From Dendrobates tinctorius (taxonomy: Eukaryota): a stretch of DNA of 51,922 nucleotides. Shown here piece by piece: positions 1,266 through 38,500 of the stretch (position 1 is the stretch's first letter; each line of letters begins with the position of its first letter). The translations under genes and the position numbers were made by a program. Where the stretch lies: NCBI RefSeq assembly GCF_039654945.1, contig NW_027361798.1, positions 3,360,079-3,412,000 on the forward strand. The letters run 5' to 3'. Below the pieces are notes generated by a model that worked only from the letters and a program-made list of their open reading frames with translations, did not search any database and was not told the origin of the DNA.

Positions 1266-1587
1266 ATTCTACAAAGATACTATAGCAGCCTGGCTCCCAT
1301 TGTAGTGCCCACCTGAGCCTCCCAGTGCAGGACATATCATGATCCGCTCACATGGCCGGCATCCCCGATTCCAAGGCGATCCTGCTGTCTGCGCTGTCGG
1401 AGGAGGACACGGTGATGGATCTGAAGCATTCCTGGTTCTGTCACAATCTCCTCAAGAAATTATCTCATTTCCGGCCAGCTTCCAGCACATCACTTCAGGT
1501 GGAACGTCATGTGTGTGTTTTAAAATGCTCCTCGGGGCTCCGCCGTGTACTCCTGTGTCCGTGGGAAAAGCCCGCTTTGTATGCTTT

Positions 1588-2975
1588 GTACACACTTGGC
1601 TCCGCTCCGTACACACCCGGCTCCGCTTCGTATACCCCATACACACGCGGCTCCGCTCCGTACACCTCGTACACACACCCGGCTCCACTCCGTACACCTC
1701 GTACACACACGGCTCCTCTCCGTACACCTCGTACACGCGCGGCTCCACTCCGTACACCTCGTACACGCGCGGCTCCACTCCGTACACCTCGTACACGCGG
1801 GGCTCCTCTCCGTCCACACACACGGCTCCGCTCCGTACACCTCGTACACACCCGGCTCCGCTCCGTACACACCCGGCTCCGCTCCGTACACACCCAGCTC
1901 CGCTCCGTATACCCCGTACACGCGCGGCTCCGCTCCGTACACCCCGTACACGCGCGGCTCCTCTCCGTACACCCCGTACACGCGCGGCTCCTCTCCGTAC
2001 ACCCCGTACACGCGCGGCTCCTCTCCGTACACCCCGTACACGCGCGGCTCCTCTCCGTACACCCCGTACACGCCCGGCTCCTCTCCGTACACCCCGTACA
2101 CGCCCGGCTCTTCTCCGTACACCCCGTACACGCCCGGCTCCACTCCGTACACCTCGTACACGCGCGGCTCCTCTCCGTACACCTCGTACACGCGCGGCTC
2201 CTCTCCGTACACCTCGTACACGCGCGGCTCCTCTCCGTACACCTCGTACACGCGCGGCTCCTCTCCGTACACCTCGTACACGCGCGGCTCCTCTCCGTAC
2301 ACCTCGTACACGCCCGGCTCCTCTCCGTACACGCCCGGCTCCTCTCCGTACACGCGCGGCTCCTCTCCGTACACGCGCGGCTCCTCTCCGTACACCCCGT
2401 ACACGCGCGGCTCCTCTCCGTACACCCCGTACACGCGCGGCTCCTCTCCGTACACCTCGTACACGCGCGGCTCCGCTCCGTACACCTCGTACACGCGCGG
2501 CTCCTCTCCGTACACCTCGTACACGCGCGGCTCCTCTCCGAACACCTCGTACACACCCGGCTCCGCTCCGTATACCCCATACACACACGGCTCCTCTCCG
2601 TACACCTCATACACACACGGCTCCATTCCGTACACCTCGTACACACACGGCTCCTCTCCGTACACCTCGTACACACACGGCTCCATTCCGTACACCTCGT
2701 ACACACGGCTCCGCTCCGTACACCTCGTACACATGGCTCCGCTCCGTACACCTCGCACACACACGGCTCCGCTCCGTACACCTCGTACACACACGGCTCC
2801 GCTCCGTACACCTTGTACACACACGGCTCCGCTCCGTACACCTCGCACACACACGGCTCCGCTCCGTACACCTCGTACACACACGGCTCCGCTCCGTACA
2901 CCTTGTACACACACGGCTCCGCTCCGTACACCTCGCACACACACGGCTCCGCTCCGTACACCTCATACACACAGC
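1588..2975. repeat. CpG-rich 30-bp minisatellite (CGCGCGGCTCCTCTCCGTACACCTCGTACA) with 20-bp and 28-bp variants
   Basis: Directly visible period-30 tandem array; explains the open frames on both strands. Confidence 0.95.
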
Positions 2976-2996
2976 TCTGCTACATCCACACTGTAA

Positions 2997-3352
2997 GGCT
3001 GTGTGCACACGCTGCGGATTAGGTGTAAAATCCGCAGGTGAAACCACAGGTCAAAAGACCTGCGGTTTTACCTGCGGATTGCTCTGCGGTTTTGCCCTGC
3101 GGTTTTTCATCTCCTCAATGGAGGAGATGGCAAACCGCAGGGGAATCCGCAGAAAGAATTGACATGTCAATTCTTTCTGCGGATTGAAAACCGCAGATAA
3201 TCCGGGCGGAAAATTCCGCACAGTCTGCACTGCGGTTTTTGATTCCCATAGGGAATCATTGTACTGTACACTGCAGCTGAAACTGCTGCGGGTCCGCAGC
3301 GGCCAAAACCGCTGCGGAACCGCAGCAAAATCCGCAGCGTGTGCACACAGCC
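2997..3352. mobile_element. PIF/Harbinger-type MITE
   Basis: TIR GGCTGTGTGCACACGCTGCGGAT at both ends; TAA TSD at 2994-2996 and 3353-3355; many internal CCGCA/TGCGG motifs. Confidence 0.9.
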
Positions 3353-3568: not shown

Positions 3569-3908
3569 CGAACAGAGCGAGCAGGCAAGCGAGTGCGACG
3601 CTGTGAGTGGCTGCGGGGGGGAGTCTCATCTCATGCTAAGGCGAGGATGGGGGGCGTGGCGGCTTATCTCCCTGCAGTGCGGGAGGAACTTGAAACTATG
3701 GGCCGGCGGCAGGAGCAACAGTGGCCGCAGCAGCTGGCAAGCGGCCAGATGATCGGGCGCTGCCGCCAGCGGCCCACGTGACAGCGGCCCAGCGGGAAAA
3801 TGCCCGGTTGGTTATATTGCCAATCCGGGCCTGGACCCGGCGCTTTTCCTCCCCTTCTTCCCAGAGCCGTAATGTTTCCTTTTCCACATTGCTGAATGTT
3901 TGTGGGAA

Positions 3909-6225
3909 GAATCATAGAATCATAGAGTTGGAAGGGACCTCCTGGGCCATCTGGTCCAACCTCCTGCTCAAAGCAGGATTCGCTAAATCATCCCAGTCAG
4001 ATGTCTGTCCAGCCTCTGTTTGAAGACTTCCATTGAAGGAGAACTCACCACTTCTCGTGGCAGCCTGTTCCATTCATTGATCACTCTAACTGTCAAAAAG
4101 TTTTTTCTAATATCTAATCTGTGTCTCCTCCTATTCAGTTTCATCCCATTGCTTCTAGTCTTTCCTTGTGCAAATGAGAATAAAGTTGATCCTTCTACAA
4201 TGTGACAGCCCTTTAGATATTTGTAGACAGCTATTAAGTCTCCTCTCAGTCTTCTCTTTTGCAAACTAAACATTCCCAAATCCTGCAACCTTTCCTCATA
4301 AGACAGGGTTTGCAGACCGGTCACCATTCTGGTTGCTCTTTTCTGAACTTGCTCCAGTTTGTTGATGTCTTTTTTAAAATGTGGTGCCCAAAACTGGACA
4401 CAATATTCCAGATGAGGTCGGACCAAAGAGGAGTAGAGGGAAATAATGACTTCACGTGATCTAGACTGTATGCTTCTGTTAATACATCCTAGAATTGCAT
4501 TTGCCTTTTTTGCTGCTGCATCACACTGTTGACTCATATTCAGTCTGTGATCTATTAGTATACCCAAGTCTTTTTCACATGTGCTGTTGCTTAGCCCTAT
4601 TCCTCCCATTCTGTATATGCTTTTTTCATTTTTATTGCCCAGATGTAGTACTTTGCATTTCTCCCTGTTAAAAACCATTCTGTTAGTTGCTGCCCACTTC
4701 TCCAGTTTATTTAAATCTTTTTGAATCCTCTCTCTCTCTTCTCTAGTATTAGCTATCCCTCCTAGCTTTGTGTCATCAGCAAATTTAATCAGTTTACCCT
4801 CAATTCCTTCATCTAAATCGTTGATAAAGATGTTGAACAATACAGGGCCCAGGACAGAGCCCTGTGGTACCCCACTTGAGACATTCTTCCAACTGGATGT
4901 GCAGCCATTTACGACCACTCTTTGGGTCCGATCACTAAGCCAGTTATGAATCCACCTAACAGTTGCCTTGTCCATTCCATACTTAGTCATTTTTTCAATA
5001 AGGATTTTATGAGAGACTTTGTCAAATGCTTTGCTGAAGTCAAGATATACTATATCTACAGCATTTCCTTGATCCACCCAATCAGTGATACCGTCATAGA
5101 AGGAAATTAAGTTAGTCTGACATGACTTATTAGTTACAAACCCATGCTGACTCTGTTTAATCACTTCATTCTTATCCAGGTACTGACATACATGTTGTTT
5201 AATAATTTGTTCAAAGATCTTTCCTGGTATAGAAGTCAGACTCACCGGCCTATAGTTGCCTGGGTCCACCTTCTTCCCCTTTTTGAAGATAGGAACAACA
5301 TTTGCTCTTCTCCAGTCTTCTGGCACTTCTCCTGTTCTCCAAGAATTTTCAAAGATTATGGAGAGGGGTTCAAAAATTTCTTCTGCTATCTCCTTCAGTA
5401 CTCTGGGGTGTAATTCATCTGGACCTGGAGACTTGAATTCATTTAGGTTAGCTAAGTGTTTCCTTACTATCTTTCTGTTTATAGATATCCTGGATTCTTC
5501 TATTCCCTTAATAGGACAGTGAATAACAGTTGATGTTACATTTCCTTTCTCAGAGAAAACAGATGCAAAATAGGAATTTAAAAGTTCAGCCTTCTCAACA
5601 TCCTGTCTTACCATTTCATCATTTTCATCCTGTAAAAATCCTATAGCATCTTTGACTTTTCTTTTACTTTTGACATATCCCCAAAATCCTTTATTATTGC
5701 TTTTGATATCTCTTGCAAGCCTCAATTCATTTTCAGCTTTAGTTAATCTGATTTGTGCCCTGCAGGTTCTGCAGACAGCATTATATTCTTCTTTAGATAT
5801 GCCTCCCTCTTTCCATTTTATAAACATTTTTTTCTTCCTTTTTAGCATGTGCTTAAGTTCTGTGTTCATCCATCCTGGTTTCCTTAAATGCTTCCTATTC
5901 TTCCCTCTTTTCGGAATTGTTAACAACTGTGCTTTGAGAATTTCATTTTTCAAGATTTCCCATCCTTCCTGGACATTTTTGTCTTTAAGGATATCCAGCC
6001 ATTGGATCCTTCCAATTCTCGTTCTGAATCCCTTAAAATCTGCCTTTCTGAAATCTAACCTTGACGTCTGAGTCTTCACAGGTCTTCCGCCTCTAGTTAT
6101 CCAAAATTCTAAAATAGCATGGTCGCTACCTCCTAGGGTCCCAGCCACTTTTACCTCCTCAACCATTTCCTCCCTGTTTATAAGGATTAGATCCAAGGTA
6201 GCAGTTCCCCTTGTTTTCTCCCCTA
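3909..6225 (-). mobile_element. CR1 LINE copy 1, 5'-truncated; ORF2 open from the end of the endonuclease through the reverse transcriptase (3983-6196)
   Basis: [29 protein letters not shown] and FADD motifs; (ATTCTATG)n 3' tail typical of CR1. Confidence 0.97.
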
Positions 6226-8203: not shown

Positions 8204-10575
8204 ATGTTTACTTTACATCAGCACAATTTTGGAACCAAAATTTTTTTTTGTTAGGAAGTTAAAAGGGTTAAAAGTTGACCAGCGATTTCTCATTTTTGCA
8301 ACACCATTTTATTTTTAGGACCACATCACATTTGAAGCCACTTTGAGGGGTCTATATGATAGAAAATACCCAAAAGTGACACCATTCTAAAAACTGCACC
8401 CCTCAAGGTGCTCAAAACCACATTCAAGAAATTCATTAACTCTTCAGGTGCGTCACAGGATTTTTTTGAATTTTTTAAAAAAATGAACATTTAACTTTTT
8501 TTTATTTTACCAAGGGTAACAGGAGAAATTGGACTGGAAAAGTTATTGTGCAGTTTGTCCTGAGTACGCCGATACCTGATATGTGGGGGGAAACCACTGT
8601 TTCGGCGCATGGCAGAGCTCAGAATGGAAGGAGCGCCGTTTGACTTTTTCAATGCAAAATTGGCTGGAATTCAGATCGGACGTCATGTCACGTTTGGAGA
8701 GCCCCTGATGTGCCTAAACAGTGGAAACCCCCCACAAGTGACCCCATTTTGGAAACTAGACCCCCCAAGGAACTTATCTAGATATGTGGTGAGAACTTTG
8801 AACCAACAAGTGCTTCACAGAAGTTTATAACGCCCGGGCGTGAAAATCAAAAAAAAATTTTTCCACAAAAATTATATTTTTGCCCCCATTTTTTTTATTT
8901 TCCTAAGGGTAACAGGAGAAATAGGACCCCAAAAGTTGTTTTGCAATTTGTCCTGAGTACACTGATACCCCATATGTCCCCGACATATGTGGGGGGGAAC
9001 CACTGTTTGGGCGCATGGCAGAGCTTGGAAGGGAAGGAGGACCGATTACTTTTTCAACGCAGAATTGGCTGCAATTGAGATCAGACGCCATGTTGCATTT
9101 GGAGAGCCCCTGATGTGCGCAAATAGTGGAAACCCCCAATTCTAACTCCAACCCTAACCCCAACACACCCCTAACCCTAATCTCAGCCCTAACCCTAATG
9201 GGAAAATGGAAATAAATACTTTTTTTTTTAATTTTATTATTTTTCCCTAACTAAGGGGGTGATAACGGGGGGTTTGATTTACTATTTATGGCGGTTTTAT
9301 GTTTGGCGGTTGTGGCACACTAAAAGACACTTTTTATTGTAAAAATAGTTTTTGCATCACCACATATTGAGAGCTATAATTTTTCCGTATTTTGACCCAC
9401 AGAGTCATGTGAGGTCTTATTTTTTGCGTGACGTTTTTATTGGTGCCATTTTCGGGCGCGTGACATCTTTTGTTCATTCTGCGTCCCAAAAATCGGAATA
9501 AAAAGTGAACAAAAACCAGCATTTCATGAATTTCTTTTGGGGGGTGCGTTTACACTGTTCCGCGTTTGGTAAAATTGATAAAGCGGTTTTATTCTTCGGG
9601 TCGGTACGATTACAGCGATACCTCTTTTATGTCTTTTTTTATGTTTTGTCGGTTTTATGCAATGAAAACTATTTTATATAGAAAATAATTATTTTTGCAT
9701 CACTTTATTATGCGAGCTATAACTTTTTTGTTCATTCTCTGATGATGCTGTGTAGCGGCTCGTTTTTTGTGGGACAAAATGACGTTTTCAGCGGTACCAT
9801 GGATAGTTATATGCGTCTTTTTGTTCGCGCATTATTGCACTTTTTGTTCGGTGGTATGATAATAAATCATTATTTTTTGCTTTGTTTTTTATTTTTTAAG
9901 GGGTTCGCTAAAGGGGTTAACTAATGGGACATTTTTATAGGGTGGGTCATTACGGACGCCGCGATACCAAATATGTGTACTTTTAGTTTTTTTTTTTATT
10001 TCCAAAAAATGAATTTATTAGGGAATATATTTTTTTTATTTATTTAGCGATTTTTTAAAAATTATTTTTACACTTTTTTTTAAACTTTATCACATAGTCC
10101 CAGGTGGGACATCAGCGATCTGTCACAGGCACTGCTGCAGACATCCTCATGCCGGCGCTTTGCAGGCACTGAGGAAGCCAACTCCCTGCAGGACCCCGAA
10201 GGTCTCCATCGCCATCTTGGATTCGGGGACCTGCAGGGATGGAGCCCCCCGCAGCAGCGCTGCACATTGCGCTGTGGTGGGGGGCTCAGGGAAGCACGGA
10301 GGGAGCCCCCTCCCTGCTGATGCTTTCCTTTAACCCCCGGTACACCGCGATTGTGTTTGATCGCGGTGTGCAAGGGGTTAACGTGTCGGGGGTGGTCCGT
10401 GACCGCCCCTGACACATTGTGCCGGGTGTCAGCTGTGATAATCAGCTGACACCCAGCCTCGATCAGCGGCGCTCACCACGTGGGCGCCGCTGATCGCTGT
10501 GACGTACTATCCCGTCCCTGGGTATTAAGTCCCAGGGCACATGGAGGGGATAGTACGTCACATGACAGAAAGGGG
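8204..10575. mobile_element. Right part of a non-autonomous piggyBac-like (TTAA) element with an internal direct repeat (about 8511-8735 and 8904-9138) and degenerate CCCTAA repeats (about 9142-9198)
   Basis: Ends AAAGGGG followed by TTAA (10576-10579); subterminal inverted repeat GACGTACTATCCC...GGGATAGTACGTC; left end missing. Confidence 0.7.
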
Positions 10576-10579
10576 TTAA

Positions 10580-11585
10580 TTAACCCAGGCATGGTATGTG
10601 AAAAGAGCTCCATGGAGTAATCTGAAGTGTGTGCTTCCACATCCTTCACTTTTGGTGTGGGTGAAGGACACAAGGAAAGGGGTTGCTCCTGACCAGAAGC
10701 CTGCAGTTACGACTCAGTGCTTGCATTTTTTACAACTTCAGAAGAGGAGGCGATAGAGCTGGAGGCTGTTTCAGCAATGTAAGCCACAAACAGTTCCTGA
10801 TACTCCGGCTTTAAAAGCAGTCTACCTACTCCCAGAAAAGGGAGCCTTACACCATGACGCTGGCTCAACACCTCCTGCCTTAGCTGCTATTGTGTTTTTG
10901 GCACTACCAGCAGATGCACCACCACCACCATCAGTACCAGGTGGCCCTGCACACCCACGTCCTCTTTCACCATACTTCCTCATGTTTTTTTTAAAATGGA
11001 CCCAAAATACCAGCAGATATATGGTACTGTATCATAAGCGTACAGCTCTATACAGTCTATGGATAACAGTAAATCTCTGTATATATTTCATGAGGCATAC
11101 ACAGACGCTCACAGGCTCAGTATGGATTACACAATAAAATAACAAGTTGAAAAAGGGTACAGTATCACCAGATAAAAGGTATATATAGTATAGTGTAAAC
11201 ATTCTGATTCTCCGTATACATTTCAGGAGGCAGACACAAACGCCCAGTATGGATTACACAAGAATATGAAAAGCTGTAAATGAGTAATGTAACACAAGCG
11301 TACAGCTGTATACAGTGTTGGGGTAATCTTAAAGTTCCAAATATATTGCCGGAGTAACAGACAGACATTTACAGGCTCATTATGGATTACACCAGAATCT
11401 AAATAGCTAAAAAGGTTACTGTATCAGAAGCGTTCTGCTGTATACAGTGTTGGCCAAATTGAAAATATCGGTATATATTTCCGGAGTCACCCTCAGACGC
11501 TCACTCAGTTTGGTTTTGACCATAATAAAAAATGTTGTAAAAAAGTTCCTGGATAACAAGATAGCAAGTATATATTTTTTAGGGT
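10580..11585 (-). mobile_element. hAT copy A: degenerate 5' part of the transposase plus upstream region
   Basis: 10580-10983 is homologous to 16890-17317 (peptide HTSDYSMELFSHTMPGL versus HTTDYSMELFSHTMPGL). Confidence 0.8.
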
Positions 11586-11589
11586 ACAA

Positions 11590-11787
11590 TTTTTGACAGT
11601 TAGAGTGATCAATGAGTGGAACAAGCTGCCACGAGAAGTGGTGAGTTCTCCTTCAATGGAAGTCTTCAAACAGAGGCTGGACAGACATCTGACTGGGATG
11701 ATTTAGCGAATCCTGCTTTGAGCAGGGGGATGGACCAGATGGCCCAGGAGGTCCCTTCCAACTCTACGATTCTATGATTCTATGATT
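11590..11787 (+). mobile_element. CR1 3'-end fragment at the junction between two hAT copies
   Basis: Near-identical to 18830-19015; ATTCTATG tail. Confidence 0.93.
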
Positions 11788-12472
11788 AGCCAATATTAGG
11801 TCAAGGTTCTCCTGTGGCATGATGTTTTGTAATTTGCCTTTATAGCGTGGATCCAGGAAGCTGGCCAACCAGTAGTCGTCATCGTTCATTATTTTGGCAA
11901 TGCGGGGGTCCCTTTTTAGGATCCGCAAGGCATAATCTGACATGTGGGCCAATGTTCCCGGTGTCAATGATGCACTGCGAGTGCTGGGTGGAGGAGCACT
12001 TTCTGGCAAATCCACATCCCTCCAGTCACGCACAAACCCTGTACCAGACCTTGCAACGCCAACATTTTCACTTGCCCCATGAGATGCATCCTCCTCCCCT
12101 AAGTAATCATCCCCATCATCATCCTCCTCCTCCTCTTCTTCCTCCACCTCGTCCAGGAGAGGTCCCTGAGCAGACAATGGCTGAATGTCATCAAGGATTC
12201 CCTCCACCTCTTCCTCCTCGTCTACATTGGCTGCAGACGCCTGCTCCTTAACCCTCCGTCAGGCGCAATAGATCTGACAGGCACACAGTAATTAGTTTCA
12301 CTTCTCTCTCCTTGCCCACTTATCAGAAAACCCCACCCCTCCTAGTTATCTCCTGACTCTACAGGCTCTGTGAAACCTGATATCACAGTGACTCAGCAGA
12401 CCTTCTAGTGAGCAGATATCAACACTTTGGCTTCTCAGGCACATTGCGCCTGATTTCAACACAAATTAAAAG

Positions 12473-12634
12473 GTTAGTATTTTCTTTTTTTATTCATCAC
12501 GATTGTGTATTTAGCTTGTTTTATGAAGGATTAATGCTAAGTTAGTGTACATAAGTACTGTTTTCTTAGACAAAAGGAGGGTGGCTTCTAAGGCACATTG
12601 CGCCCTAACACATACTCTTTCTCTCTTGCTTCAG
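12473..12634 (+). other. Putative 5'-UTR intron of the piggyBac transposase
   Basis: AG/GTTAGT donor, CCCTAAC branch point (12603-12609), polypyrimidine tract, CAG acceptor 13 nt before the ATG. Confidence 0.55.
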
Positions 12635-12647
12635 ATTTTCTGCTGCA

Positions 12648-14441
12648 ATGGCCAGAAAACAGTATGATTCATCTAAACCCCTTCATTTAGAAGAAATGAA
12701 GATTTTTTTGTTAGAAGATGATGAGGAAGAACCAGCAGTAACTGAGGATTTAGAGGAATCTAGTGACATTTCATCTGAAGATGAGGTAGCAGAATGTAAC
12801 ACTGATTCTGGAACAGAGCAGGATGGTGATGACACTGATACAGAGGAAACAGACACAGATCTAGCTTATTATTTGGGCAAAGATAAAAATACAAAGTGGA
12901 ACAAAAAGGCACCCAAGAACAAACAGCGCAGAGAATCCCACAATATTATTACACACCTTCCTGGAGTTATTGGAAGTGCTAGAAAAGCTAAAACTGCAGT
13001 GGAATGTTGGAGTAATCTAATTACAGATAGCATGTTGGAAACTATTGTTCGGTTCACTAACCAGTATATTGACACAATCAAAGAGCAATTCTCCAGAGAG
13101 AGGGACATCAAAAACACTGATGTGATTGAACTCAAGGCATTTATTGGCTTGTTATACCTAGCTGGTGCTTTCAGAGCAAATAGGCAAAGTTTGGAGGAGC
13201 TGTGGGGGACAGACGGTGATGGCATCGAAAAATTCAGCCTTGTGATGAATCTGAAACGATTCAAAGTCCTGATCCGTTGCCTCCGTTTCGATGATCGAAG
13301 TACCCGGACAGAACGAAAAGGTTATGACCGGCTTGCACCAATTCGGGACATATTTCAACAATTTATTATGAATTGTCAAAAAAGCTATTGCCCGGGGCAA
13401 AACCTCACTATTGATGAGATGCTTCCAGGTTTCCGTGGAAGATGTGGTTTTCGGCAATATATACCATCAAAGCCAAACAAATATGGAATTAAAATTTTTG
13501 CCATGGTTGATGCAAGGATGATGTACACTATGAACATGGAAGTTTATTGTGGAAGACAGCCACCAGGTCCTTTCAATGTGAGCAACAAGCCTAGTGATGT
13601 GGTAAAGAGAATTGCTGAGCCAATGTTTGGATCTGGTCGAAATATCACTGCTGACAACTGGTTTACTGACTTTGATCTGATTGATTTTTTAAAAACGAAA
13701 AAGCTGTCATATGTGGGAACTGTTAGAAAAAACAAAAGGCAGTTGCCGCCTGATTTTCTATATACAAAAGGCAAACAACAGTATAGCACTATGTTTGGGT
13801 TCAGTAATGGAAAGATTTTAGTTTCTTACATCCCACGCGAGAGGAAAAATGTGATTTTGGTCTCTTCATTACATAATGATTACACCATTGATCCAGAGTC
13901 TGGGGAGCTAAGGAAACCAGAAATCATAACTTTTTATAATTTGACCAAAAGCGGCGTTGACACTGCTGACCAAATGTGTGGCAATTTCAATGTAAGTCGA
14001 AATACCAAACGCTGGCCGATGGTAATCTTCTTTACAATGCTGAATGTGGGTGGCATCAACTCACAAGTAATTTACCTCAGTAATGAACTTAAACAAATGC
14101 GCAGAAGAATGTACCTAAAACAATTGGCTAATGAACTGGTGAGTGGAGAGCTAAGCCTAAGAAGTACAAAGACGGTTGGAATGCCCCTTGCCCTGCAACA
14201 CCGGTTGAAGAGATATCGTCCCAAGGACGTTCCAGAACAAACACCGACTCTACCACCTTCTAAAAGACGCAGTTGTACTACCTGCTCATTTGTATCTGGT
14301 TTCAGAAGGCTTTCTAAATATGACTGCAAAATATGTAAAGAATCAATCTGCCTTTCCCATGCAACTTTCGTCTGCCAGCCTTGCTTTTCTAAGTGTACCT
14401 GTGCTGCTTCTGCTGCAATTGAAACCACTGAAGATGAGTAG
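12648..14441 (+). CDS. piggyBac transposase, intact, 597 aa
   Basis: Acidic N-terminus; DDD triad in TIDEM, TADNWFT and GVDTADQ; FRGRC..YIPSKPNKYGIK block; C-terminal Cys/His-rich domain. Confidence 0.96.
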   Translation: MARKQYDSSKPLHLEEMKIFLLEDDEEEPAVTEDLEESSDISSEDEVAECNTDSGTEQDGDDTDTEETDTDLAYYLGKDKNTKWNKKAPKNKQRRESHNIITHLPGVIGSARKAKTAVECWSNLITDSMLETIVRFTNQYIDTIKEQFSRERDIKNTDVIELKAFIGLLYLAGAFRANRQSLEELWGTDGDGIEKFSLVMNLKRFKVLIRCLRFDDRSTRTERKGYDRLAPIRDIFQQFIMNCQKSYCPGQNLTIDEMLPGFRGRCGFRQYIPSKPNKYGIKIFAMVDARMMYTMNMEVYCGRQPPGPFNVSNKPSDVVKRIAEPMFGSGRNITADNWFTDFDLIDFLKTKKLSYVGTVRKNKRQLPPDFLYTKGKQQYSTMFGFSNGKILVSYIPRERKNVILVSSLHNDYTIDPESGELRKPEIITFYNLTKSGVDTADQMCGNFNVSRNTKRWPMVIFFTMLNVGGINSQVIYLSNELKQMRRRMYLKQLANELVSGELSLRSTKTVGMPLALQHRLKRYRPKDVPEQTPTLPPSKRRSCTTCSFVSGFRRLSKYDCKICKESICLSHATFVCQPCFSKCTCAASAAIETTEDE

Positions 14442-17400
14442 AAAATAATTAAGTAACATCTAAGTGCAATATCCTTTAAGTTTTTTTCCATAATTTTATA
14501 TTTAAGCAATAGTTAAGTAAAGATAACTGGAGCCTATTTGGCGGTACTACCGAAAAGTGGTACTTTTAGTTTTAATAAGTTTATGGTTAATAAATGGGTT
14601 TTTTTTGCATCTGATTTGGTGTAATCTCTTTTAATACATTCCTATGAAGGTCACTGACTACTTCTATAGTCCTGAAATTGAAATATGTAGCTACTATAGG
14701 TGGTTTTCTGACCTGTGCTTGTCAGGCACATTGCGCATGAACTGAGGAGAATCTATATTGCGCCTGACGGAGGGTTAAGGTGCGTCAAAGTTTGCATGAG
14801 CAGACGCATAAGTGGGATGCTCATGCTTAGGATGGCGTCGTCTGCGCTTACCAGCCGTGTGCATTCCTCAAAACACTGAAGGACTTTACAGAGGTCATTC
14901 AGCTTCGACCACTGCACGCCTGTCAACTCCATGTCTGCTCTCAAAGTGCCTGGCCGTGTATCCTCCCACAAATGCATTATGGCCTGCCTCTGCTCGCACA
15001 GCCGCTCCACCATGTGCAGGGTGGAGTTCCACCTTGTTGCAATGTCGATAATGAGGCGGTGGTTGGGAAGGTGGAGCAATCGCTGCAGCTTCTGCATACG
15101 AACGGAGTGTACAGGCGACCGGCGGATGTGCGCGCACAGTCTTCGCACCTTATGGAGCAGGGCTGTTAACTCCGGATAATTAGTGAGGAAGCACTGCACC
15201 ACCAGGTTCAAGGTGTGAGCCAAGCAAGGTATGTGGCTGAGTTTTGAAAGGGCTATGGCTGCCACAAAATTACGGCCGTTATCACTAACTACCTTGCCTG
15301 CCTCAAGATGTATACTGCCCAGCCATGACTCAGTTTGTCGCTTCAAGTACTCGGCCAGCACCTCGGCGGTGTGTCTGTCGCCCAAACACATCATCTGCAA
15401 CACAGCCTGCTGACGCTTTCCACTAGCTGCTCGATAGGGGGACACATCGTGTGCAACAGTGGCAGCTGCAGATGGAGTGCTTGTACGACTGCGCTCTGTG
15501 GACGAGCTTTCGCTTCTGGAGGAGGAGGAGGAAGAGGAGGAGGGTCGAACGCCTACAGCCAACTGTTTCCTATACCGTGGGCTAGGCAGCACTGTCCCAC
15601 CACCGCTATCCCCTGTGGACCCTGCATCCACCACATTAACCCAGTGCGCAGTGATGGACACGTAACGGCCCTGGCCATGCCGACTGGACCATGCATCAGT
15701 TGTGAGGTGCACCTTTCCGCTCATTGACTGCTTGAGTGCATGGACAATGCGGTCTTTCACATGATGGTGGAGGGCTGGGATAGCTTTGCGAGAGAAGAAG
15801 TGGCGACTGGGTAGGTCATAGCGTGGTACTGCATAGGCCATGAGTTCGCGGAAAGCTATGCTTTCCACCAACCGAAAGGGCATCATCTCAAACGAGATTA
15901 GTTTGGCAATGTGGGCGTTCAAACCCAGTGTACGCGGATGAGAGACTGAGTACTTTCTTGACCTACTCATAGTGTCTGGGAGGGTGAGCTGGACTTGAGA
16001 GCTGCATATGGTGGAAGTAGCGGTGGACAGGGCGGACTGAGAGAGGGTTGATGATGGTGATGGAGTTGGTGTTCTTTCTGATGGCCTAGAATCAGTCTTT
16101 CGTTGATATAACAGTGGGATTCCCTGACTGCTGTGGTCTTGCAACGACACCTCAACATTTGCTGCTGTGCTAACCGGTGGGCTTACAGTGGGGGAAACAA
16201 TGTAGCGTTGCTGACTACCTTCGTTGTGATCAGTTGCACATGGGGCACTTGAGGTTTGGTGTTGTGTCCACACTTGCAAGTGCATGCTGGTTAAGTGTCT
16301 AAGCATGCAACTGATATTCAAATTTTTCAGATTTTTCCCTCGGCTAAAGGTCTTTGCGCACTTCTTACAGATAACCTTGGCCTGATCATGAGGATTTTGT
16401 TCAAAAAAGTGCCACACTGCACTCTTCCTACTTTGGCAGACATTTTGCGGCCTAGCACGCTGTGATCTTTTGACCCTCTGGACAAGCTGTCCAGCAACTC
16501 TTTTGATGTTTGGAACCTGTCTTTGGAGTGCTCCGGGCCTGCCAGATAACAGCTGTGGCGATGTCGATGTCTGCTGTGGATGCTCCTCATCTGAGCTATT
16601 GGAAGCAGCACCCTCTTCCCCCAATGGATGCCAATCTGGGTCAACAACTGGGTCATCCATCACCTCCTCTTCTATGTCATGTGCACCTTCCTCTGTGTCA
16701 CCGTGTATGGTGGTATAGTGTGCGGGAAGGGGCACCTGAGTCTCATCATGGTCAGAATCTGGCTCTGCACACTGCGAGGACAATGTAGTGCTCTGAGTGA
16801 ATGTACCAGCAGAATCATCCATCAGCGGCTGTGCATCAGTGCACTCCATGTCAGATTCATCTTGGCCTGGGTAATTCACCATTTCACTTGATAATCCAGG
16901 CATGGTATGTGAAAACAGCTCCATGGAGTAATCAGTAGTATGGCCTGCGTCATCCTTCAATCTTGGTTGGGGTGAAGGACACAAGGAAAGGTGTGGTTCA
17001 TGAACATGAGCCTCCAATGACGACTCAGTGCTTTTACTTTTTACAACTGAAGAAGAGGAGGCGATAGAGCTGGAGGCTGAGTCAGCAATGTAAGACAAAA
17101 CTTTTTCCTGATGCTCTGGCTTTAAAAGCGGTTTGCCAACTCTTAGAAAACTAAGCGTTCGAGGCCTTATGTAGCCAGACGATGACGCAGGGTCAGCACC
17201 TCCTGCATTCGGTCCTATTTTGCTCTTGCCACTACCATCAGATCCACCACCAACACCATCATTACCAGCTGCCAACCCCCGCCCAATTCCACGGCCTCTT
17301 CCACCAGCCTTCCTCATTTTTGGTAGAAATGTAGACAAAATCCAACAAACTATATAGTAATGTAAAACAAGGTAAAAGGTGTCTATAGGACAGGGGAGAT

Positions 17401-17632
17401 TTTGAATTTCTGCAGACACTTGTGGACACTGGACACTTTTGGATTGTGTGAGGCCCACTGATATCTGAGCGCTATGTGACAGGCTCGATGGCACAGCTGT
17501 GACAAAAGTGACTAGAGGATAAGGGAGATTGGATTGCTTTTAAAAAAGCAGTTTGCGGAGCAGTGGGTAAACAGCAATGCAGGAATGTCAGGAAGCCTTA
17601 GAAGGCAGCCCAACAACCAACACCACTGATAC

Positions 17633-19015
17633 TGTTCCTATCTTCAAAAAGGGGAAGAAGGTGGACCCAGGCAACTATAGGCCGGTGAGTCTGACTTCTA
17701 TACCAGGAAAGATCTTTGAACAAATTATTAAACAACATGTATGTCAATACCTGGATAAGAATGAAGTGATTAAACAGAGTCAGCATGGGTTTGTAACTAA
17801 TAAGTCATGTCAGACTAATTTAATTTCCTTCTATGATGGTATTACTGATTGGGTGGATCAAGGAAATGCTGTAGATATAGTATATCTTGACTTCAGCAAA
17901 GCATTTGACAAAGTCTCTCATACAATCCTTATTGAAAAAATGACTAAGTATGGAATGGACAAGGCAACTGTTAGGTGGATTCATAACTGGCTTAGTGATC
18001 GGACCCAAAGAGTGGTCGTAAATGGCTGCACATCCAGTTGGAAGAATGTCTCAAGTGGGGTACCACAGGGCTCTGTCCTGGGCCCTGTATTGTTCAACAT
18101 CTTTATCAACGATTTAGATGAAGGAATTGAGGGTAAACTGATTAAATTTGCTGATGACACAAAGCTAGGAGGGATAGCTAATACTAGAGAAGAGAGAGAG
18201 AGGATTCAAAAAGATTTAAATAAACTGGAGAAGTGGGCAGCAACTAACAGAATGGTTTTTAACAGGGAGAAATGCAAAGTACTACATCTGGGCAATAAAA
18301 ATGAAAAAAGCATATATAGAATGGGAGGAATAGGGCTAAGTGACAGCACATGTGAAAAAGACTTGGGTATACTAATAGATCACAGACTGAATATGAGTCA
18401 ACAGTGTGATGCAGCAGCAAAAAAGGCAAATGCAATTCTAGGATGTATTAACAGAAGCATACAGTTTAGATCACGTGAAGTAATTATTTCCCTCTACTCC
18501 TCTTTGGTCAGACCTCATCTGGAATATTGTGTCCAATTTTGGGCACCACATTTTAAAAAAGACATCAACAAACTGGAGCAAGTTCAGAAAAGAGCGACCA
18601 GAATGGTGACCGGTCTGCAAACCCTGTCTTATGAGGAAAGGTTGCAGGATTTGGGAATGTTTAGTTTGCAAAAGAGAAGACTGAGAGGAGACTTAATAGC
18701 TGTCTACAAATATCTAAAGGGCTGTCACATTGTAGAAGGATCAACTTTATTCTCATTTGCACAAGGAAAGACTAGAAGCAATGGGATGAAACTGAATGGG
18801 AGGAGACACAGATTAGATATTAGAAAAAACTTTTTGACAGTTAGAGTGATCAATGAGTGGAACAGGCTGCCACGAGAAGTGGTGAGTTCTCCTTCAATGG
18901 AAGTCTTCAAACAGAGGCTGGACAGACATCTAACTGGGATGATTTAGCGAATCCTGCTTTGAGCAGGGGGTTGGACCAGATGGCCCAGGAGGTCCCTTCC
19001 AACTCTACGATTATA
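17633..19015 (+). mobile_element. CR1 copy 2, 5'-truncated, RT frame open to 18947, inserted in the hAT-B upstream repeat
   Basis: Near-identical to copy 1; TGATAC on both sides (17627-17632, 19016-19021); uninterrupted site visible in the sister repeat at about 19681-19720. Confidence 0.96.
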
Positions 19016-19195
19016 TGATACACCACTATATAGCCTCCCCTTGCACTGCACACACAGTGACTGGTGTGTTGTGCAGGCCAAATTGCTAGCAGCAGAAGCA
19101 GTTTTTTTTTCTTCTCAGCAGGACAAAAAAAAAAAATTGGGATTGCTTTTAAAAAAGCAGTTTGCGGAGCAGTGGGTAAACAGCAATGCAGGAAT

Positions 19196-35507: not shown

Positions 35508-38500
35508 ATGAAGAAGGCAGGGAGTAAGGCACGTGGTCGTGGAGTTTCAGCAGGGAGAGGACGGGGGGATTCGGTGTCTGCTGCGGCCACCAGTGACCCG
35601 GCATCCCCCAGTTTTAGCAGGCAACAGTCCTTTATGCGCAGCTTTTTAGGACCTCGCCATACCCCACTGCTGCGGGACGAACAAACTGAAGCAGTTGTCG
35701 GATGGATGGCAGCTAATGCATTGAATTCAATGACTTCCACGTCCTCTCAGGGCCAGAGCACCGAAGAGCAACTATCTGTCTCTTCACCACCTGCCAAATT
35801 GCCCAGGCAGTCAGAGAGCCCTGGACAGGAGCCATCTCAATCTTTACTTCTGTTCTCAGAATCTGTTGGCTTGGAAAGAGGTGGCCAGCCAAGCAGCATT
35901 CTAGAGCGTGAAGAAGAGGGAGTATGCAGTGATGCGCAACTGCTTTGTCCCTCTGAATCTGAAGAGGCGGGTGGGCCAGTGCCTATGGTCAGCACACCTC
36001 AGTACGCATCAGATGATGATAAGACTCAGGTGACACTTTCTGGTGCGTACGGTGCTGGCGAGACAACCCAGGACCAGCCGGTGCTTGAAGAGGGGAGTGG
36101 AGATGATGAGGTCCTTGACCCATCATGGCGTGAGGAACAGGAAGGTGGTGGGAGCAGCTCTGAGGAAGAGATTCCCTGAACGGCCAAGACAGGAGGGAGA
36201 GGGAGGGGGCAGACTTGGTTGCCTGTAGCCTCCACTTCGGCACCCGTTAGGAGCATTCCTCTTCCAAAACCCAAAACGGGCGCTCCCAAGACTTGCAGTG
36301 CGTGGTCCTTTTTTGACACAGTTGTAGATGACATTTGCTTTGTCAAATGCAAGCTGTGTCATCAGAAAGTCAAAAGAGGGAAAAGTGTCAGCAACCTCAA
36401 TACCACAAAAATGTGGAAACATGTGCGGACCAAGCACGAGCTGGAGTTACACAGACACACTGAAGACGTAGGCCAACCTACAGCACCACCTACCACCTCT
36501 TCAGCTCATGTTGGGGCCTCTTCCTCCAGCTCACACACAGCTGGTTCGGCTTCCTCACAGGATCGCCAAGGAAGAACCTCTGGCACTGTTGTCCGGACAC
36601 CCTGTGACATTCCACCCACAGCACCACGTTCCCTGTCATCCTCACTCCCAGGCCACTCTACAGCCATCGGTCGCACAGGCATGGGAGAAAAGGCGGCCAT
36701 ACTCCGCAAACCATCCCCGAGCACAGGCTCTGAATGCTGGCATTGCCAAACTACTGGCCCTTGAAATGCTCTCATTCAGGCTGGTGGAGACTGACACCTT
36801 CCGGAACTTCATGGCATTGGCAGTCCCACAATACACTGTGCCCAGCCGCTTTGATTTCAGCAGGCGAGCCGTCACTGCCCTGCAAAAACATGTGGAGGGA
36901 AAAATAAAACATGCTCTACTAAACGCCGTCAGTAGCAAGGTCCACCTGACCACCGATGCGTGGACCAGTAACCATGGACAGGGACGATACCTTTCCCTCA
37001 CTGCCCATTGGGTCAATGTTGTGGAGCCGGGTACAGATCTGGAGAGTGGCGCTGTACGTGTTCTGCCAACTCCACGGATTGCAGGAATCCAGTCTGTACA
37101 CATAGACTCCTCATCCTACTCAAGTTCCTCTGAAACAGCGCAGCAGGAGCCTGTTACGACCGATATGAGCACAGCCGTGGCCAAACATCAACAGGCCGTA
37201 CTGAAATTAATTTCTTTGGGGAATCGAAGCCACACAGCGCAGGAGCTCTGGAATGCCATCAAGCAGGAGAGCGATGTGTGGTTTGTGCCAGCGAATCTCC
37301 AGCCAGCAGGCTGGGTAGTGTGTGACAATGGCCGAAATCTGGTGGCAGCTCTGGGCCTAGGCAACCTCACTCACATCCCATGTCTGGCACATGTGCTCAG
37401 CTTGGTCGTGCAGAGTTTTCTGAGGGACTATCCGGATCTTGATGCACTGCTGCACAAGGTCCGCATAGAGTGCGCTCACTTGCGTCGTTCCAGCACGGCA
37501 AGATCGCGCCTTGCTGCTCTGCAGCGCCAATTACGCCTTCCGGAACATCACATCATATGTGACCTACCCACCAGGTGGAATTCAACGTTACATATGTTGG
37601 AGCGGTTGTGTGAGCAGCAGGCAGCAGTCATGGAGTACCAGCTGCATCAGGCGCAAACAAGTCGCACTGTGCGCCGGTCACACTTCACCACCACTGAGTG
37701 GACCTCTATGAAGGACATCTGCTTCGTTTTGCGTGCCTTCGATGATTCCACGCGGATGGCGAGTGCAGACGATGCACTAGTCAGCATGACTGTCCCCCTT
37801 ATCTGCATGCTTCAAAAAACACTGCAAGCACAAAGGGAGGAGGTTCTGGAAGAGGTGGAGGATGAGGAGTCCCAAATGCCATCTGCTTCTGGACAGTCTG
37901 CGCTACGTGGTTCCTCACAAAGGCCTAGGCAGGGGACACTTTGTGAGGAGGATGAGGAGGAGTCGATGGAGGAGGAAGACATCTCTCCACAGGAGGGAGG
38001 TACACAAAGCTCTAATCAGTATGTACAGCGAGGGTGGGGTGATGCAGAGCAGGCAGAGATGACGACTCAAGCAGGGGACAGCGGTTCTTGGGCAGTTGGG
38101 AGTCTGCAGCACATGGTTGACTTCATGCTGCAGTACCTGAGAAACGACCGCCGCATCGCCCATATTCTCAACACAGCTGATTATTGGGTGTACACCCTCC
38201 TAGATCCTCGCTACTGGGACAACTTACAAAGCCTCACCGTTGAACTGGGAGCGTAAAATGTACCAAGACACACTGGTGCAGTCCATCATGTTCTCCATTC
38301 CAACCGACAGCACTGCTGCTAGTGCTTTACAAAGCAGCTCTGTGCATCGAGGCAGTGGAGGAAGCTCTGCACAGAGGGAGCAGAGGCAGCGCCTCAGCAT
38401 AAGGCAAGACCACTATGGCCCAAATGAGTCAAAGTTTTGAGTGCCCGCCACAAATGTCTACACCATCACAGATGGCTCCAGTCAGTAGGAGGCAACGTTT

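What the first reader, a model, noticed from the sequence alone, without database searches (positions are those of the whole stretch)
12248..14778. Intact, apparently young piggyBac: candidate active vertebrate transposase
Seen: perfect 19-bp TIRs, TTAA duplication, an uninterrupted 597-aa ORF with the full DDD triad and Cys-rich tail, and a total size of 2.5 kb. It is the only complete autonomous-looking element in the window. Known: few naturally active piggyBacs are described from vertebrates (piggyBat, Xenopus Uribo/TxpB types), and the core motifs here recall the Trichoplusia ni enzyme. Inference: recent activity, possible horizontal acquisition, and possible value as a gene-transfer tool.
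Basis: partly seen in the sequence, partly recalled or inferred. Interest (0 to 1): 0.72.

Follow-up and report, generated by a model that had tools for sequence, protein, structure and literature searches.

The report
Intact young piggyBac in poison frog
This is a complete, almost unmutated copy of a cut-and-paste "jumping gene" of the piggyBac type in a poison-frog genome; it has everything it needs to move and is a good candidate for testing, but it belongs to a well-known kind of element and no movement has been shown.

Summary
A 2,523-bp element lies between two TTAA copies (12248-12251, 14775-14778). It has perfect 19-bp inverted ends and one uninterrupted 597-codon gene for a piggyBac transposase.

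- **Enzyme:** D256, D336 and D438 match the catalytic triad of the moth enzyme, and all eight zinc ligands of the Cys-rich tail are present. It keeps 102 of 103 positions conserved in 108 relatives.
- **Insertion:** it sits inside a hAT-type transposase gene. That gene's reading frame closes exactly when the element and one TTAA are removed.
- **Family:** the host is a dendrobatid (poison) frog. Copies at least 99.5% identical occur in sequencing runs under four organism labels. Ranitomeya imitator and Dendrobates tinctorius carry annotated genes for it. Other insertion sites and an internally deleted derivative exist.
- **Non-coding parts:** the ends, three copies of a 14-bp motif and a leader-intron splice donor keep the same spacing in relatives whose enzyme is only 64-67% identical.
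- **Origin:** the nearest relatives outside frogs (a grasshopper, Hydra, marine metagenome DNA) are at most 67% identical, so recent acquisition from outside is not supported.

Mobility, insertion polymorphism and expression were not shown here. The scan has already reported another copy of what its note describes as the same family in this genome (s1-386060).

**Verdict:** a new member of a known kind, of moderate interest.

The parts
12248..12251 (.). Left copy of the TTAA target-site duplication
   Evidence: Copies of the host hAT without the insertion carry a single TTAA here (joint 12247->14775 with 4 shared letters).
12252..12270 (+). Left terminal inverted repeat, 19 bp, starting CCC
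   Evidence: Perfect inverted match to 14756-14774. Nearly the same string ends the elements in L001-L005, whose transposases are 64-67% identical.
12436..12450 (+). Subterminal motif 1 (core AGGCACATTGCGCC, a near-palindrome built from the inner half of the end repeat); proposed binding site for the Cys-rich domain
   Evidence: Three copies in the window against 0.12 expected. It lies at offset +189 from the left TTAA in the frog element and in all four relatives. Binding is inferred by analogy with the T. ni 19-bp internal repeat (PMC7351741).
12473..12634 (+). Predicted 162-nt leader (5'UTR) intron: donor AAG|GTTAGT, pyrimidine tract plus CAG acceptor 13 nt before the ATG
   Evidence: The donor string sits at offset +221 in the frog element and in L001, L002, L004 and L005. 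The acceptor fits the N-terminus MKFSAAM of the D. tinctorius gene model P0128. No spliced contig was seen, so splicing is inferred, not shown.
12590..12604 (+). Subterminal motif 2, inside the predicted leader intron
   Evidence: It lies at offset +341 to +344 in all five elements.
12648..14441 (+). Transposase gene, 597 codons plus TAG; catalytic D256, D336, D438; Cys-rich domain about residues 543-579
   Evidence: AlphaFold2 model: pLDDT 82.6, Foldseek 6x67_C E 5e-39, TM 0.82 by target, 36% identity.
14589..14594 (+). AATAAA polyadenylation signal in the 3' UTR
   Evidence: Read directly from the sequence. Function is inferred.
14723..14737 (+). Subterminal motif 3, starting 32 nt before the right end repeat
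   Evidence: The same 32-nt distance holds in L002 and L005.
14756..14774 (-). Right terminal inverted repeat, 19 bp
14775..14778 (.). Right copy of the TTAA target-site duplication
11764..12251 (-). Downstream part of the host hAT-type (zf-BED) transposase reading frame that the insertion cut
   Evidence: Removing the element and one TTAA gives one open 1,082-codon frame across the junction, against a 913-aa ORF on one side of the insertion as it stands (translated in a local script only).
14775..17494 (-). Upstream part of the same hAT-type reading frame, with a BED zinc finger
   Evidence: Pfam zf-BED E 5e-11.

Best explanation
A structurally complete, very young copy of an autonomous piggyBac DNA transposon, from a family that amplified recently in dendrobatid (poison) frogs. 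It inserted by the usual piggyBac route into a TTAA inside an older hAT transposon.

Expected mechanism, inferred from the T. ni enzyme: the 597-aa transposase is made from a leader that probably carries a 162-nt intron. Its catalytic core (D256, D336, D438) pairs and cuts the two 19-bp ends. Its C-terminal zinc domain probably binds the near-palindromic 14-bp motifs, two far inside the left end and one 18 bp inside the right end, which makes the two ends asymmetric. The element is excised and re-inserted at another TTAA, which is duplicated.

Shown here: the anatomy, the clean insertion, the integrity of coding and non-coding parts, the multi-copy near-identical family, and its family membership. 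Inferred: binding of the motifs, splicing of the leader, and competence of the enzyme. I put enzyme activity in a cell assay at about 0.6 and continued germline movement of the family today at about 0.45.
For: - **Ends:** TTAA duplication and perfect 19-bp ends, 0 expected by chance.
- **Enzyme:** Pfam DDE_Tnp_1_7 at 2e-75. T. ni piggyBac 6x67 at E 1.3e-90 with the catalytic triad aligned. Predicted fold matches 6x67 at TM 0.82. 102 of 103 columns conserved in at least 95% of 108 relatives are kept. The one exception, K376, is shared by the whole frog family.
- **This copy:** its protein equals the family majority at every site but S478, a variable column where 13 relatives also have S. It has only 2 to 5 DNA differences from contigs of four organism labels over about 2.5 kb.
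- **Insertion:** the host hAT frame closes exactly at a single TTAA, and hAT copies without the insertion exist in runs X1 and X9.
- **Family:** other flanks adjoin the left end in X1 and X17, and a 1,320-bp internal-deletion derivative is present in X1. At least 9 annotated loci lie on 5 chromosome-size records of R. imitator and one in D. tinctorius.
- **Non-coding parts:** ends, three motifs and splice donor sit at identical offsets (+189, +221, about +342; 32 nt before the right end) in relatives with 64-67% identical enzymes.
Against: - No direct sign of movement. All runs laid were assembled contigs, so allelic empty sites, somatic excision and transcript ends could not be seen.
- This particular filled junction was not seen among the listed contig pieces.
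- No spliced leader contig was seen, and the runs labelled RNA are only guesses.
- Pfam's own models did not hit the Cys-rich tail.
- Sister copies are already dead (D256G in P0126 and P0129; truncations in five others), so the family is decaying as well as young.
- Host silencing was not examined.
Confidence: 0.85

Rival explanations
1. Intact-looking but retired. The family stopped moving (host silencing or loss of a needed factor) and this copy is simply too young to have decayed. It is a fossil less than about 2 million years old, not a live element.
For: Many sister copies are damaged (D256G in P0126 and P0129; truncated models P0121-P0124, P0127, P0002). No spliced or clearly RNA-derived contig was found. 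Low-divergence repeats make up 4.76 of the 6.76 Gb strawberry poison frog genome, so youth alone is common there (PMC6278860).
Against: The ORF has no damaging change at any of 103 conserved columns. All non-coding signals are intact. The copy differs from the family sequence at 2 to 5 sites only.
Confidence: 0.4
2. The family reached the different poison-frog genera recently by horizontal transfer, between frogs or from one unsampled source, rather than by descent. That would explain near-identity across genera.
For: Contigs under four organism labels are 99.5-99.96% identical to one another over coding and non-coding parts. A D. tinctorius copy differs from the window protein at 6 of 597 residues, no more than R. 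imitator copies differ among themselves. The genus Ranitomeya alone is about 10 million years old (PMC10924724). The major dendrobatid clade D of Santos et al. dates to 29.9 million years (PMC2653552); that the two genera fall inside it, which would bound their split at about 10 to 30 million years, is my own assumption. A second frog subfamily shows about 15% divergence between R. imitator and Phyllobates.
Against: The organism labels are coded, so it is not known that they are different genera or even different species. Only proteins, not DNA, of the named species could be fetched. Selection on an active transposase keeps proteins alike. No host-gene control was possible.
Confidence: 0.3
3. 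A domesticated piggyBac-derived host gene (PGBD-like), as the database name 'piggyBac transposable element-derived protein 4-like' suggests.
For: Only the automatic names in public annotation.
Against: It has perfect ends and a target duplication, lies inside another transposon, is multi-copy at different sites, and has deletion derivatives and dead paralogues. Domesticated genes lack ends and are single-copy and syntenic (PMC5381638).
Confidence: 0.02
4. Contamination of the assembly by prey (arthropod) DNA, or an assembly chimera.
For: The closest named non-frog relatives are insects, and poison frogs eat arthropods.
Against: The element is embedded with an exact TTAA duplication in a frog hAT gene whose frame it interrupts. 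The same family is on chromosome-scale records of two frog assemblies and in 20 runs of 10 studies. The nearest insect protein is only 65% identical.
Confidence: 0.01

Closest known systems
piggyBac (IFP2) of the moth Trichoplusia ni, the type element; structures 6x67 and 6x68
   Same: TTAA target duplication. Ends beginning CCC and ending GGG. One transposase ORF of nearly the same length (597 against 594 aa). The same domain order: a disordered acidic N-terminus, DNA-binding and RNase H-like core with D-D-D, an insertion domain and a C-terminal cross-brace zinc domain. Asymmetric ends with a palindrome-like internal repeat. Scores: E 1.3e-90, TM 0.82 and 36% identity. Background from PMC7351741.
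   Different: The ends are 19 bp rather than 13 bp and have a different sequence. The internal motifs lie 165 and about 320 bp inside the left end and 18 bp inside the right end, not 3 and 31 bp. A conserved leader intron is predicted. The host is a vertebrate.
Unnamed piggyBac elements in a Tara Oceans marine metagenome (P0006; L002, L003) and in anonymous assemblies (P0005/L001, P0010/L004, P0007/L005), with annotated genes of Schistocerca nitens and Hydra vulgaris
   Same: Same clade (98-99 support). Nearly the same 19-bp ends, the same 14-bp motif at the same offsets and the same leader splice donor.
   Different: The transposases are only 64-67% identical. The rest of the non-coding DNA is unalignable. 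L002 and L003 are 2.69 kb with a longer 3' part. Their hosts are non-vertebrate or unknown.
   Same: Vertebrate hosts, young copies, the same superfamily and fold (9c0f: E 4.8e-37; TM 0.71).
   Different: Distant lineage: 23% identity to piggyBat. piggyBat activity is demonstrated (PMC11707139); none is demonstrated here.
Sister copies in the same family: R. imitator XP_069618531 and others, and D. tinctorius XP_073417112 (filed as a SERAC1 isoform)
   Same: 93-100% identical proteins.
   Different: Those copies carry private changes (7 in P0001; D256G in P0126 and P0129) or truncations. The window copy is the closest to the family majority sequence of all those seen.

Membership tests
piggyBac superfamily (autonomous piggyBac-like element) | Insertion at TTAA with duplication of TTAA | tested here: met
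   TTAA on both sides. A single TTAA in uninterrupted paralogous hAT copies. The host frame closes at one TTAA.
piggyBac superfamily (autonomous piggyBac-like element) | Terminal inverted repeats, typically beginning CCC and ending GGG | tested here: met
   Perfect 19-bp repeat starting CCCTCC.
piggyBac superfamily (autonomous piggyBac-like element) | Transposase with the DDE_Tnp_1_7 core and an intact D-D-D triad | tested here: met
   Pfam 2e-75. D256, D336 and D438 align with D268, D346 and D447 (residues per PMC7351741). These positions are conserved in 106-107 of 108 relatives.
piggyBac superfamily (autonomous piggyBac-like element) | C-terminal cysteine-rich (cross-brace zinc) domain | tested here: met
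   Aligned to T. ni residues 553-594. Eight ligands conserved. No Pfam zinc-ribbon model hit, so this rests on alignment and pattern.
piggyBac superfamily (autonomous piggyBac-like element) | Fold of the solved piggyBac transposase | tested here: met
   AlphaFold2 pLDDT 82.6. Foldseek 6x67_C E 5e-39, TM 0.82 by target.
Currently active transposon | Several near-identical copies at different sites, with deletion derivatives | tested here: met
Currently active transposon | Presence/absence polymorphism of insertions among individuals | not testable with these tools
   Only assembled contigs were available, and the empty sites seen belong to paralogous hAT copies.
Currently active transposon | Transcription of the transposase | tested here: inconclusive
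   No holder is on record as RNA. The runs marked 'RNA?' are guesses, and their contigs are unspliced and run into flanking DNA.
Currently active transposon | Excision and integration in an assay | not testable with these tools
   Needs bench work.
Domesticated PGBD-type gene | Single-copy, syntenic, without transposon ends | tested here: not met
   Ends, target duplication and multiple copies are present.

The most novel reading that the evidence does not exclude
This family is a live vertebrate piggyBac that spread within the last one or two million years across poison-frog genera by horizontal transfer. It belongs to an otherwise invertebrate and marine clade whose members share, to the nucleotide, an unusual end architecture: palindromic transposase-binding motifs placed about 165 and 320 bp inside the left end, around a conserved leader intron. 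That architecture would then be a so far undescribed way of coupling splicing or transcription of the transposase leader to end recognition.
Probability: 0.15. Interest if true: 0.65.

Novelty: new member of a known kind. Interest (0 to 1): 0.42.

Why it matters
Few vertebrate DNA transposons are still mobile. [quoted passage not shown] A native frog element with an undamaged enzyme and complete ends is a ready candidate for excision and integration assays. It could also serve as a marker of ongoing genome growth in the very large, repeat-rich poison-frog genomes (PMC6278860).

The fixed spacing of ends, motifs and leader intron across a clade with 35% protein divergence gives a concrete map of the non-coding parts that probably matter for this lineage.

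The value is limited, because thousands of piggyBac elements have been mined and many shown active (PMC13461360), and because the same family has already been reported by this scan.

Tried and rejected
- **DNA of sister copies:** fetching it for R. imitator, D. tinctorius and Schistocerca failed because the sample files are too large. Two exact look-ups found no record. A nucleotide comparison between named species, and dS against host genes, could therefore not be done.
- **Collection scans:** the end-repeat pattern gave no match in viral contigs (a possible viral carrier) or in JGI metagenome contigs.
- **Literature:** searches found no paper on a dendrobatid piggyBac. Rogers 2018 covers Mariner/Tc1 transfer only.
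- **Findings search by sequence:** blank.
- **Pfam on the Cys-rich tail alone:** no family.
- **Bacterial promoter/terminator scan of the leader:** not applicable to a frog gene, and empty.
- **Careful tree search:** it did not finish in time, so the quick tree with the site-mixture model was used.
- **Rejected readings:** domesticated gene, prey contamination, and recent acquisition from an insect (see the rival explanations).
- **Searches deliberately skipped:** the big exhaustive protein search was not used, as the word search and family scans left nothing open. The joined empty-site hAT reading (1,082 codons) was translated only in a local script and sent to no search tool; its pieces were searched by reference. 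The predicted spliced leader was not joined or searched.


Full report
**1. What is there**

The window shows TTAA at 12248-12251, then a 19-bp string starting CCCTCC. Its exact reverse complement sits at 14756-14774, followed by TTAA at 14775-14778. The 23-nt string of TTAA plus end occurs exactly twice in 51.9 kb, in inverted orientation. None was found in 100 shuffles, even allowing three mismatches. The arms part at position 20, so the repeat is 19 bp.

Between the ends lies one 597-codon ORF, 12648-14441.

**2. The protein**

- Pfam gives DDE_Tnp_1_7 at E 2e-75, covering the whole model.
- Against solved structures, the best match is the Trichoplusia ni piggyBac transposase (6x67) at E 1.3e-90 over residues 24-580. 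piggyBat (9c0f) follows at 4.8e-37.
- In that alignment D256, D336 and D438 pair with D268, D346 and D447, the catalytic triad of the moth enzyme (PMC7351741).
- By my reading of the same alignment, D441, W456, R360 and K363 pair with D450, W465, R372 and K375. D441 and W456 are unchanged in all 108 relatives; the other two columns vary between R and K.
- The tail carries C543, C546, C560, C563, C568, H571, C576 and C579. It aligns with the moth Cys-rich domain (residues 553-594), and each ligand is conserved in at least 102 of 108 relatives. Pfam's own zinc-ribbon model did not hit.
- An AlphaFold2 model built on 50 relatives has mean pLDDT 82.6. Foldseek places it on 6x67_C at E 5e-39, TM 0.82 by target and 36% identity, and on piggyBat at 23% identity.
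- Of 103 alignment columns conserved in at least 95% of 108 relatives outside the family, the window protein keeps 102. The exception, K376 for R, is shared by every member of the frog family, so it is not a lesion of this copy.

**3. The insertion**

The element lies inside a minus-strand reading frame with a BED zinc finger, a hAT-type transposase. As the sequence stands, that frame ends inside the piggyBac end. When the element and one TTAA are taken out, a single open frame of 1,082 codons runs across the junction. This joined reading was made only in a local script and was sent to no search tool.

In runs X1 and X9, contigs of other copies of this abundant hAT family join 12247 to 14775 with four shared letters, that is, a single TTAA. 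So the insertion was a clean TTAA event into an older repeat. These empty sites are paralogous. They say nothing about whether this locus is polymorphic.

**4. Host and family**

Earlier notes on this window call the genome a frog related to poison frogs. The best protein hit is 99% identical and annotated in Ranitomeya imitator. The 90% cluster holds eight R. imitator models and two isoforms of one Dendrobates tinctorius locus. With P0002, that makes nine R. imitator models, spread over five chromosome-size records. The exact window protein is not on record, so I leave the species open.

Aligned, the window protein equals the family majority everywhere but S478. That is a variable column where 13 distant relatives also have S. 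The sister copies are worse off:
- P0126 and P0129 have D256G at the catalytic site.
- P0001 has seven private changes.
- Six other models are truncated or run off into unrelated sequence.

**5. Reads**

Twenty runs from ten studies, under four coded organism labels, hold 68-95% of the element's 31-mers. All are kept as assembled contigs. Laid on 11800-15300, contigs cover the element as follows:

| Run | Organism label | Differences from the window copy |
|---|---|---|
| X1 | A | 4 plus 1 gap |
| X9 | B | 5 plus 1 gap |
| X10 | C | 6 |
| X17 | D | 11 |

- Two differences are common to all four runs: 12468, and 13751, which is synonymous (P368). These are private to the window copy.
- 14079 (S478G) and 14597/14598 are shared by three runs.
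- That leaves 2 to 5 private changes in 2,523 bp. At 1e-9 per site per year (the rate used in PMC6278860), this is of the order of one to two million years. The figure is very rough.
- The left end adjoins other flanking sequences in X1 and X17, so other insertion sites exist.
- X1 holds a derivative lacking 12897-14216, the kind of internal deletion left by interrupted gap repair after excision.
- This locus's own filled junction was not among the listed pieces.
- Depth figures are per contig and cannot give copy number. I did not test either claim.

**6. Non-coding anatomy**

A 14-bp motif, AGGCACATTGCGCC, occurs three times on the + strand: 12436-12450, 12590-12604 and 14723-14737, against 0.12 expected. 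It is a near-palindrome whose halves repeat the inner half of the end repeat.

I fetched four relatives whose transposases are 64-67% identical: L001; L002 and L003 from a Tara Oceans marine metagenome; L004; and L005. The L002/L003 right end equals the frog end over 20 nt, and the other recovered ends differ at up to four of 23 positions; L001 and L004 are contigs that stop before the right end. The internal features sit at the same offsets from the left TTAA:

| Feature | Offset |
|---|---|
| Motif 1 | +189 in all five elements |
| String AAAGGTTAGTA (a splice donor) | +221 in all five |
| Motif 2 | +341 to +344 |
| Motif 3 | starts 32 nt before the right end (frog, L002/L003 and L005) |

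The remaining non-coding DNA does not align. Such fixed spacing across 35% protein divergence shows these parts are under constraint, and the window copy has them all.

By analogy with the moth element, I infer that the motifs are the zinc domain's binding sites and that the ends are functionally asymmetric. In the moth element a dimer of Cys-rich domains binds a palindromic 19-bp internal repeat, and asymmetric ends are required (PMC7351741).

The donor at 12472/12473 and the pyrimidine tract plus CAG at 12634 predict a 162-nt leader intron. No spliced contig was seen, so splicing is inferred.

**7. Relatives and horizontal transfer**

Outside dendrobatids the best hits are 64-67% identical. 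They include Schistocerca nitens, Hydra vulgaris, beetles, a marine metagenome and many anonymous assemblies.

In a tree of 112 proteins, the window, R. imitator A and D. tinctorius form a fully supported group. It sits on a long branch in an unresolved set with the grasshopper, Hydra, a ladybird and two further dendrobatid subfamilies. With a site-mixture model, the seven dendrobatid rows come out as one group with support 32, which is neither shown nor rejected.

So the wider clade does not follow the host tree, as is usual for piggyBac. But there is no close outside donor, and one old entry followed by diversification in frogs is possible. Recent acquisition from outside is not supported.

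What remains open is spread among frog genera. The four organism labels differ from each other by only 0.04-0.3% over coding and non-coding DNA. The D. tinctorius protein is as close to the window as R. imitator copies are. Yet Ranitomeya alone is about 10 million years old (PMC10924724), and one of the four major dendrobatid clades in PMC2653552 (clade D) dates to 29.9 million years. That Ranitomeya and Dendrobates both belong to it is my own knowledge, not taken from the passages read.

Because the labels are coded and no DNA of named species could be fetched, I rate this reading at 0.3.

**8. Known or new**

No paper on a dendrobatid piggyBac was found. The family is annotated automatically as 'piggyBac transposable element-derived protein 4-like', and once as a SERAC1 isoform.

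The kind of element is thoroughly known. Surveys list piggyBac-like elements in Xenopus, bats, fish and many insects (PMC5381638). A 2025 study mined more than 13,000 elements and found 10 of 23 tested active (PMC13461360). Poison-frog genomes are known to be full of low-divergence transposons (PMC6278860). The scan itself has already reported another copy in this genome (s1-386060); by that note, the other copy has a change at an invariant residue, which this one has not.

**9. Verdict**

Recent horizontal acquisition is not supported, and mobility is untested.

It is a new member of a known kind, with interest 0.42. The most useful additions here are the clean empty-site proof, the finding that this copy is the least damaged of those on record, and the nucleotide-exact conservation of its end architecture and leader intron across a deep clade.

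Noticed in passing
window 11764-12251 and 14775-17494 (minus strand): A hAT-type transposase gene with a BED zinc finger, cut by the piggyBac. It is open for 1,082 codons once the insertion is removed. The family is very abundant and varied in all four runs laid (thousands of contigs at 90-100% likeness).
   Followed up: partly
window 11590-11780, 3908-4099, 18831-19019: A roughly 190-bp repeat, 97-98% alike in three places. Two of them lie at the ends of ORFs with a reverse-transcriptase domain (3983-6196 minus, 17577-18947 plus), so it is probably the tail of a young LINE. The copy at 11590-11780 truncates the hAT gene downstream of the piggyBac.
   Followed up: partly
window 12897-14216 (as seen in run X1): An internally deleted derivative of the element, lacking 1,320 bp with GA filled in, is present in organism A at a contig depth comparable to the full-length form.
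   Followed up: no
window 13701-13750 (runs X10 and X17): A roughly 50-nt piece of the transposase ORF appears in contigs whose loose ends look like intron ends (TTCAG before, GTAAGT behind). X10 also shows very high summed depth in a few short bins of the element. It may be an exonised fragment or an unrelated repeat; it remains unexplained.
   Followed up: no
proteins P0125 and P0128 (Dendrobates tinctorius, public annotation): Two 'SERAC1 isoforms' are in fact this transposase. P0128 joins a SERAC1 exon to the element's leader acceptor across 26 kb, a chimeric gene model caused by an intronic copy.
   Followed up: partly
proteins P0126 and P0129 (Ranitomeya imitator): Two full-length sister copies on one chromosome share D256G at the first catalytic aspartate and several other changes, so a dead copy has itself been duplicated or mobilised in trans.
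   Followed up: no
window 10473-10871 (minus strand): Short ORFs repeat N-terminal strings of the hAT protein (for example MELFSHTMPGL and SSSIASSS). A second, fragmentary copy of the same hAT family therefore lies next to the first.
   Followed up: no
window 36508-38256 (+) and 1339-3162 (both strands): A 582-codon ORF with no Pfam family. Separately, a GC-rich stretch is open in several frames on both strands, with only low-complexity (extensin or pentapeptide-like) matches.
   Followed up: no
window 12243-12251 and 14775-14783: The target site is itself nearly palindromic around TTAA (GCTCC TTAA GGTGC), which lengthens the apparent inverted repeat to 28 nt at 96%.
   Followed up: no
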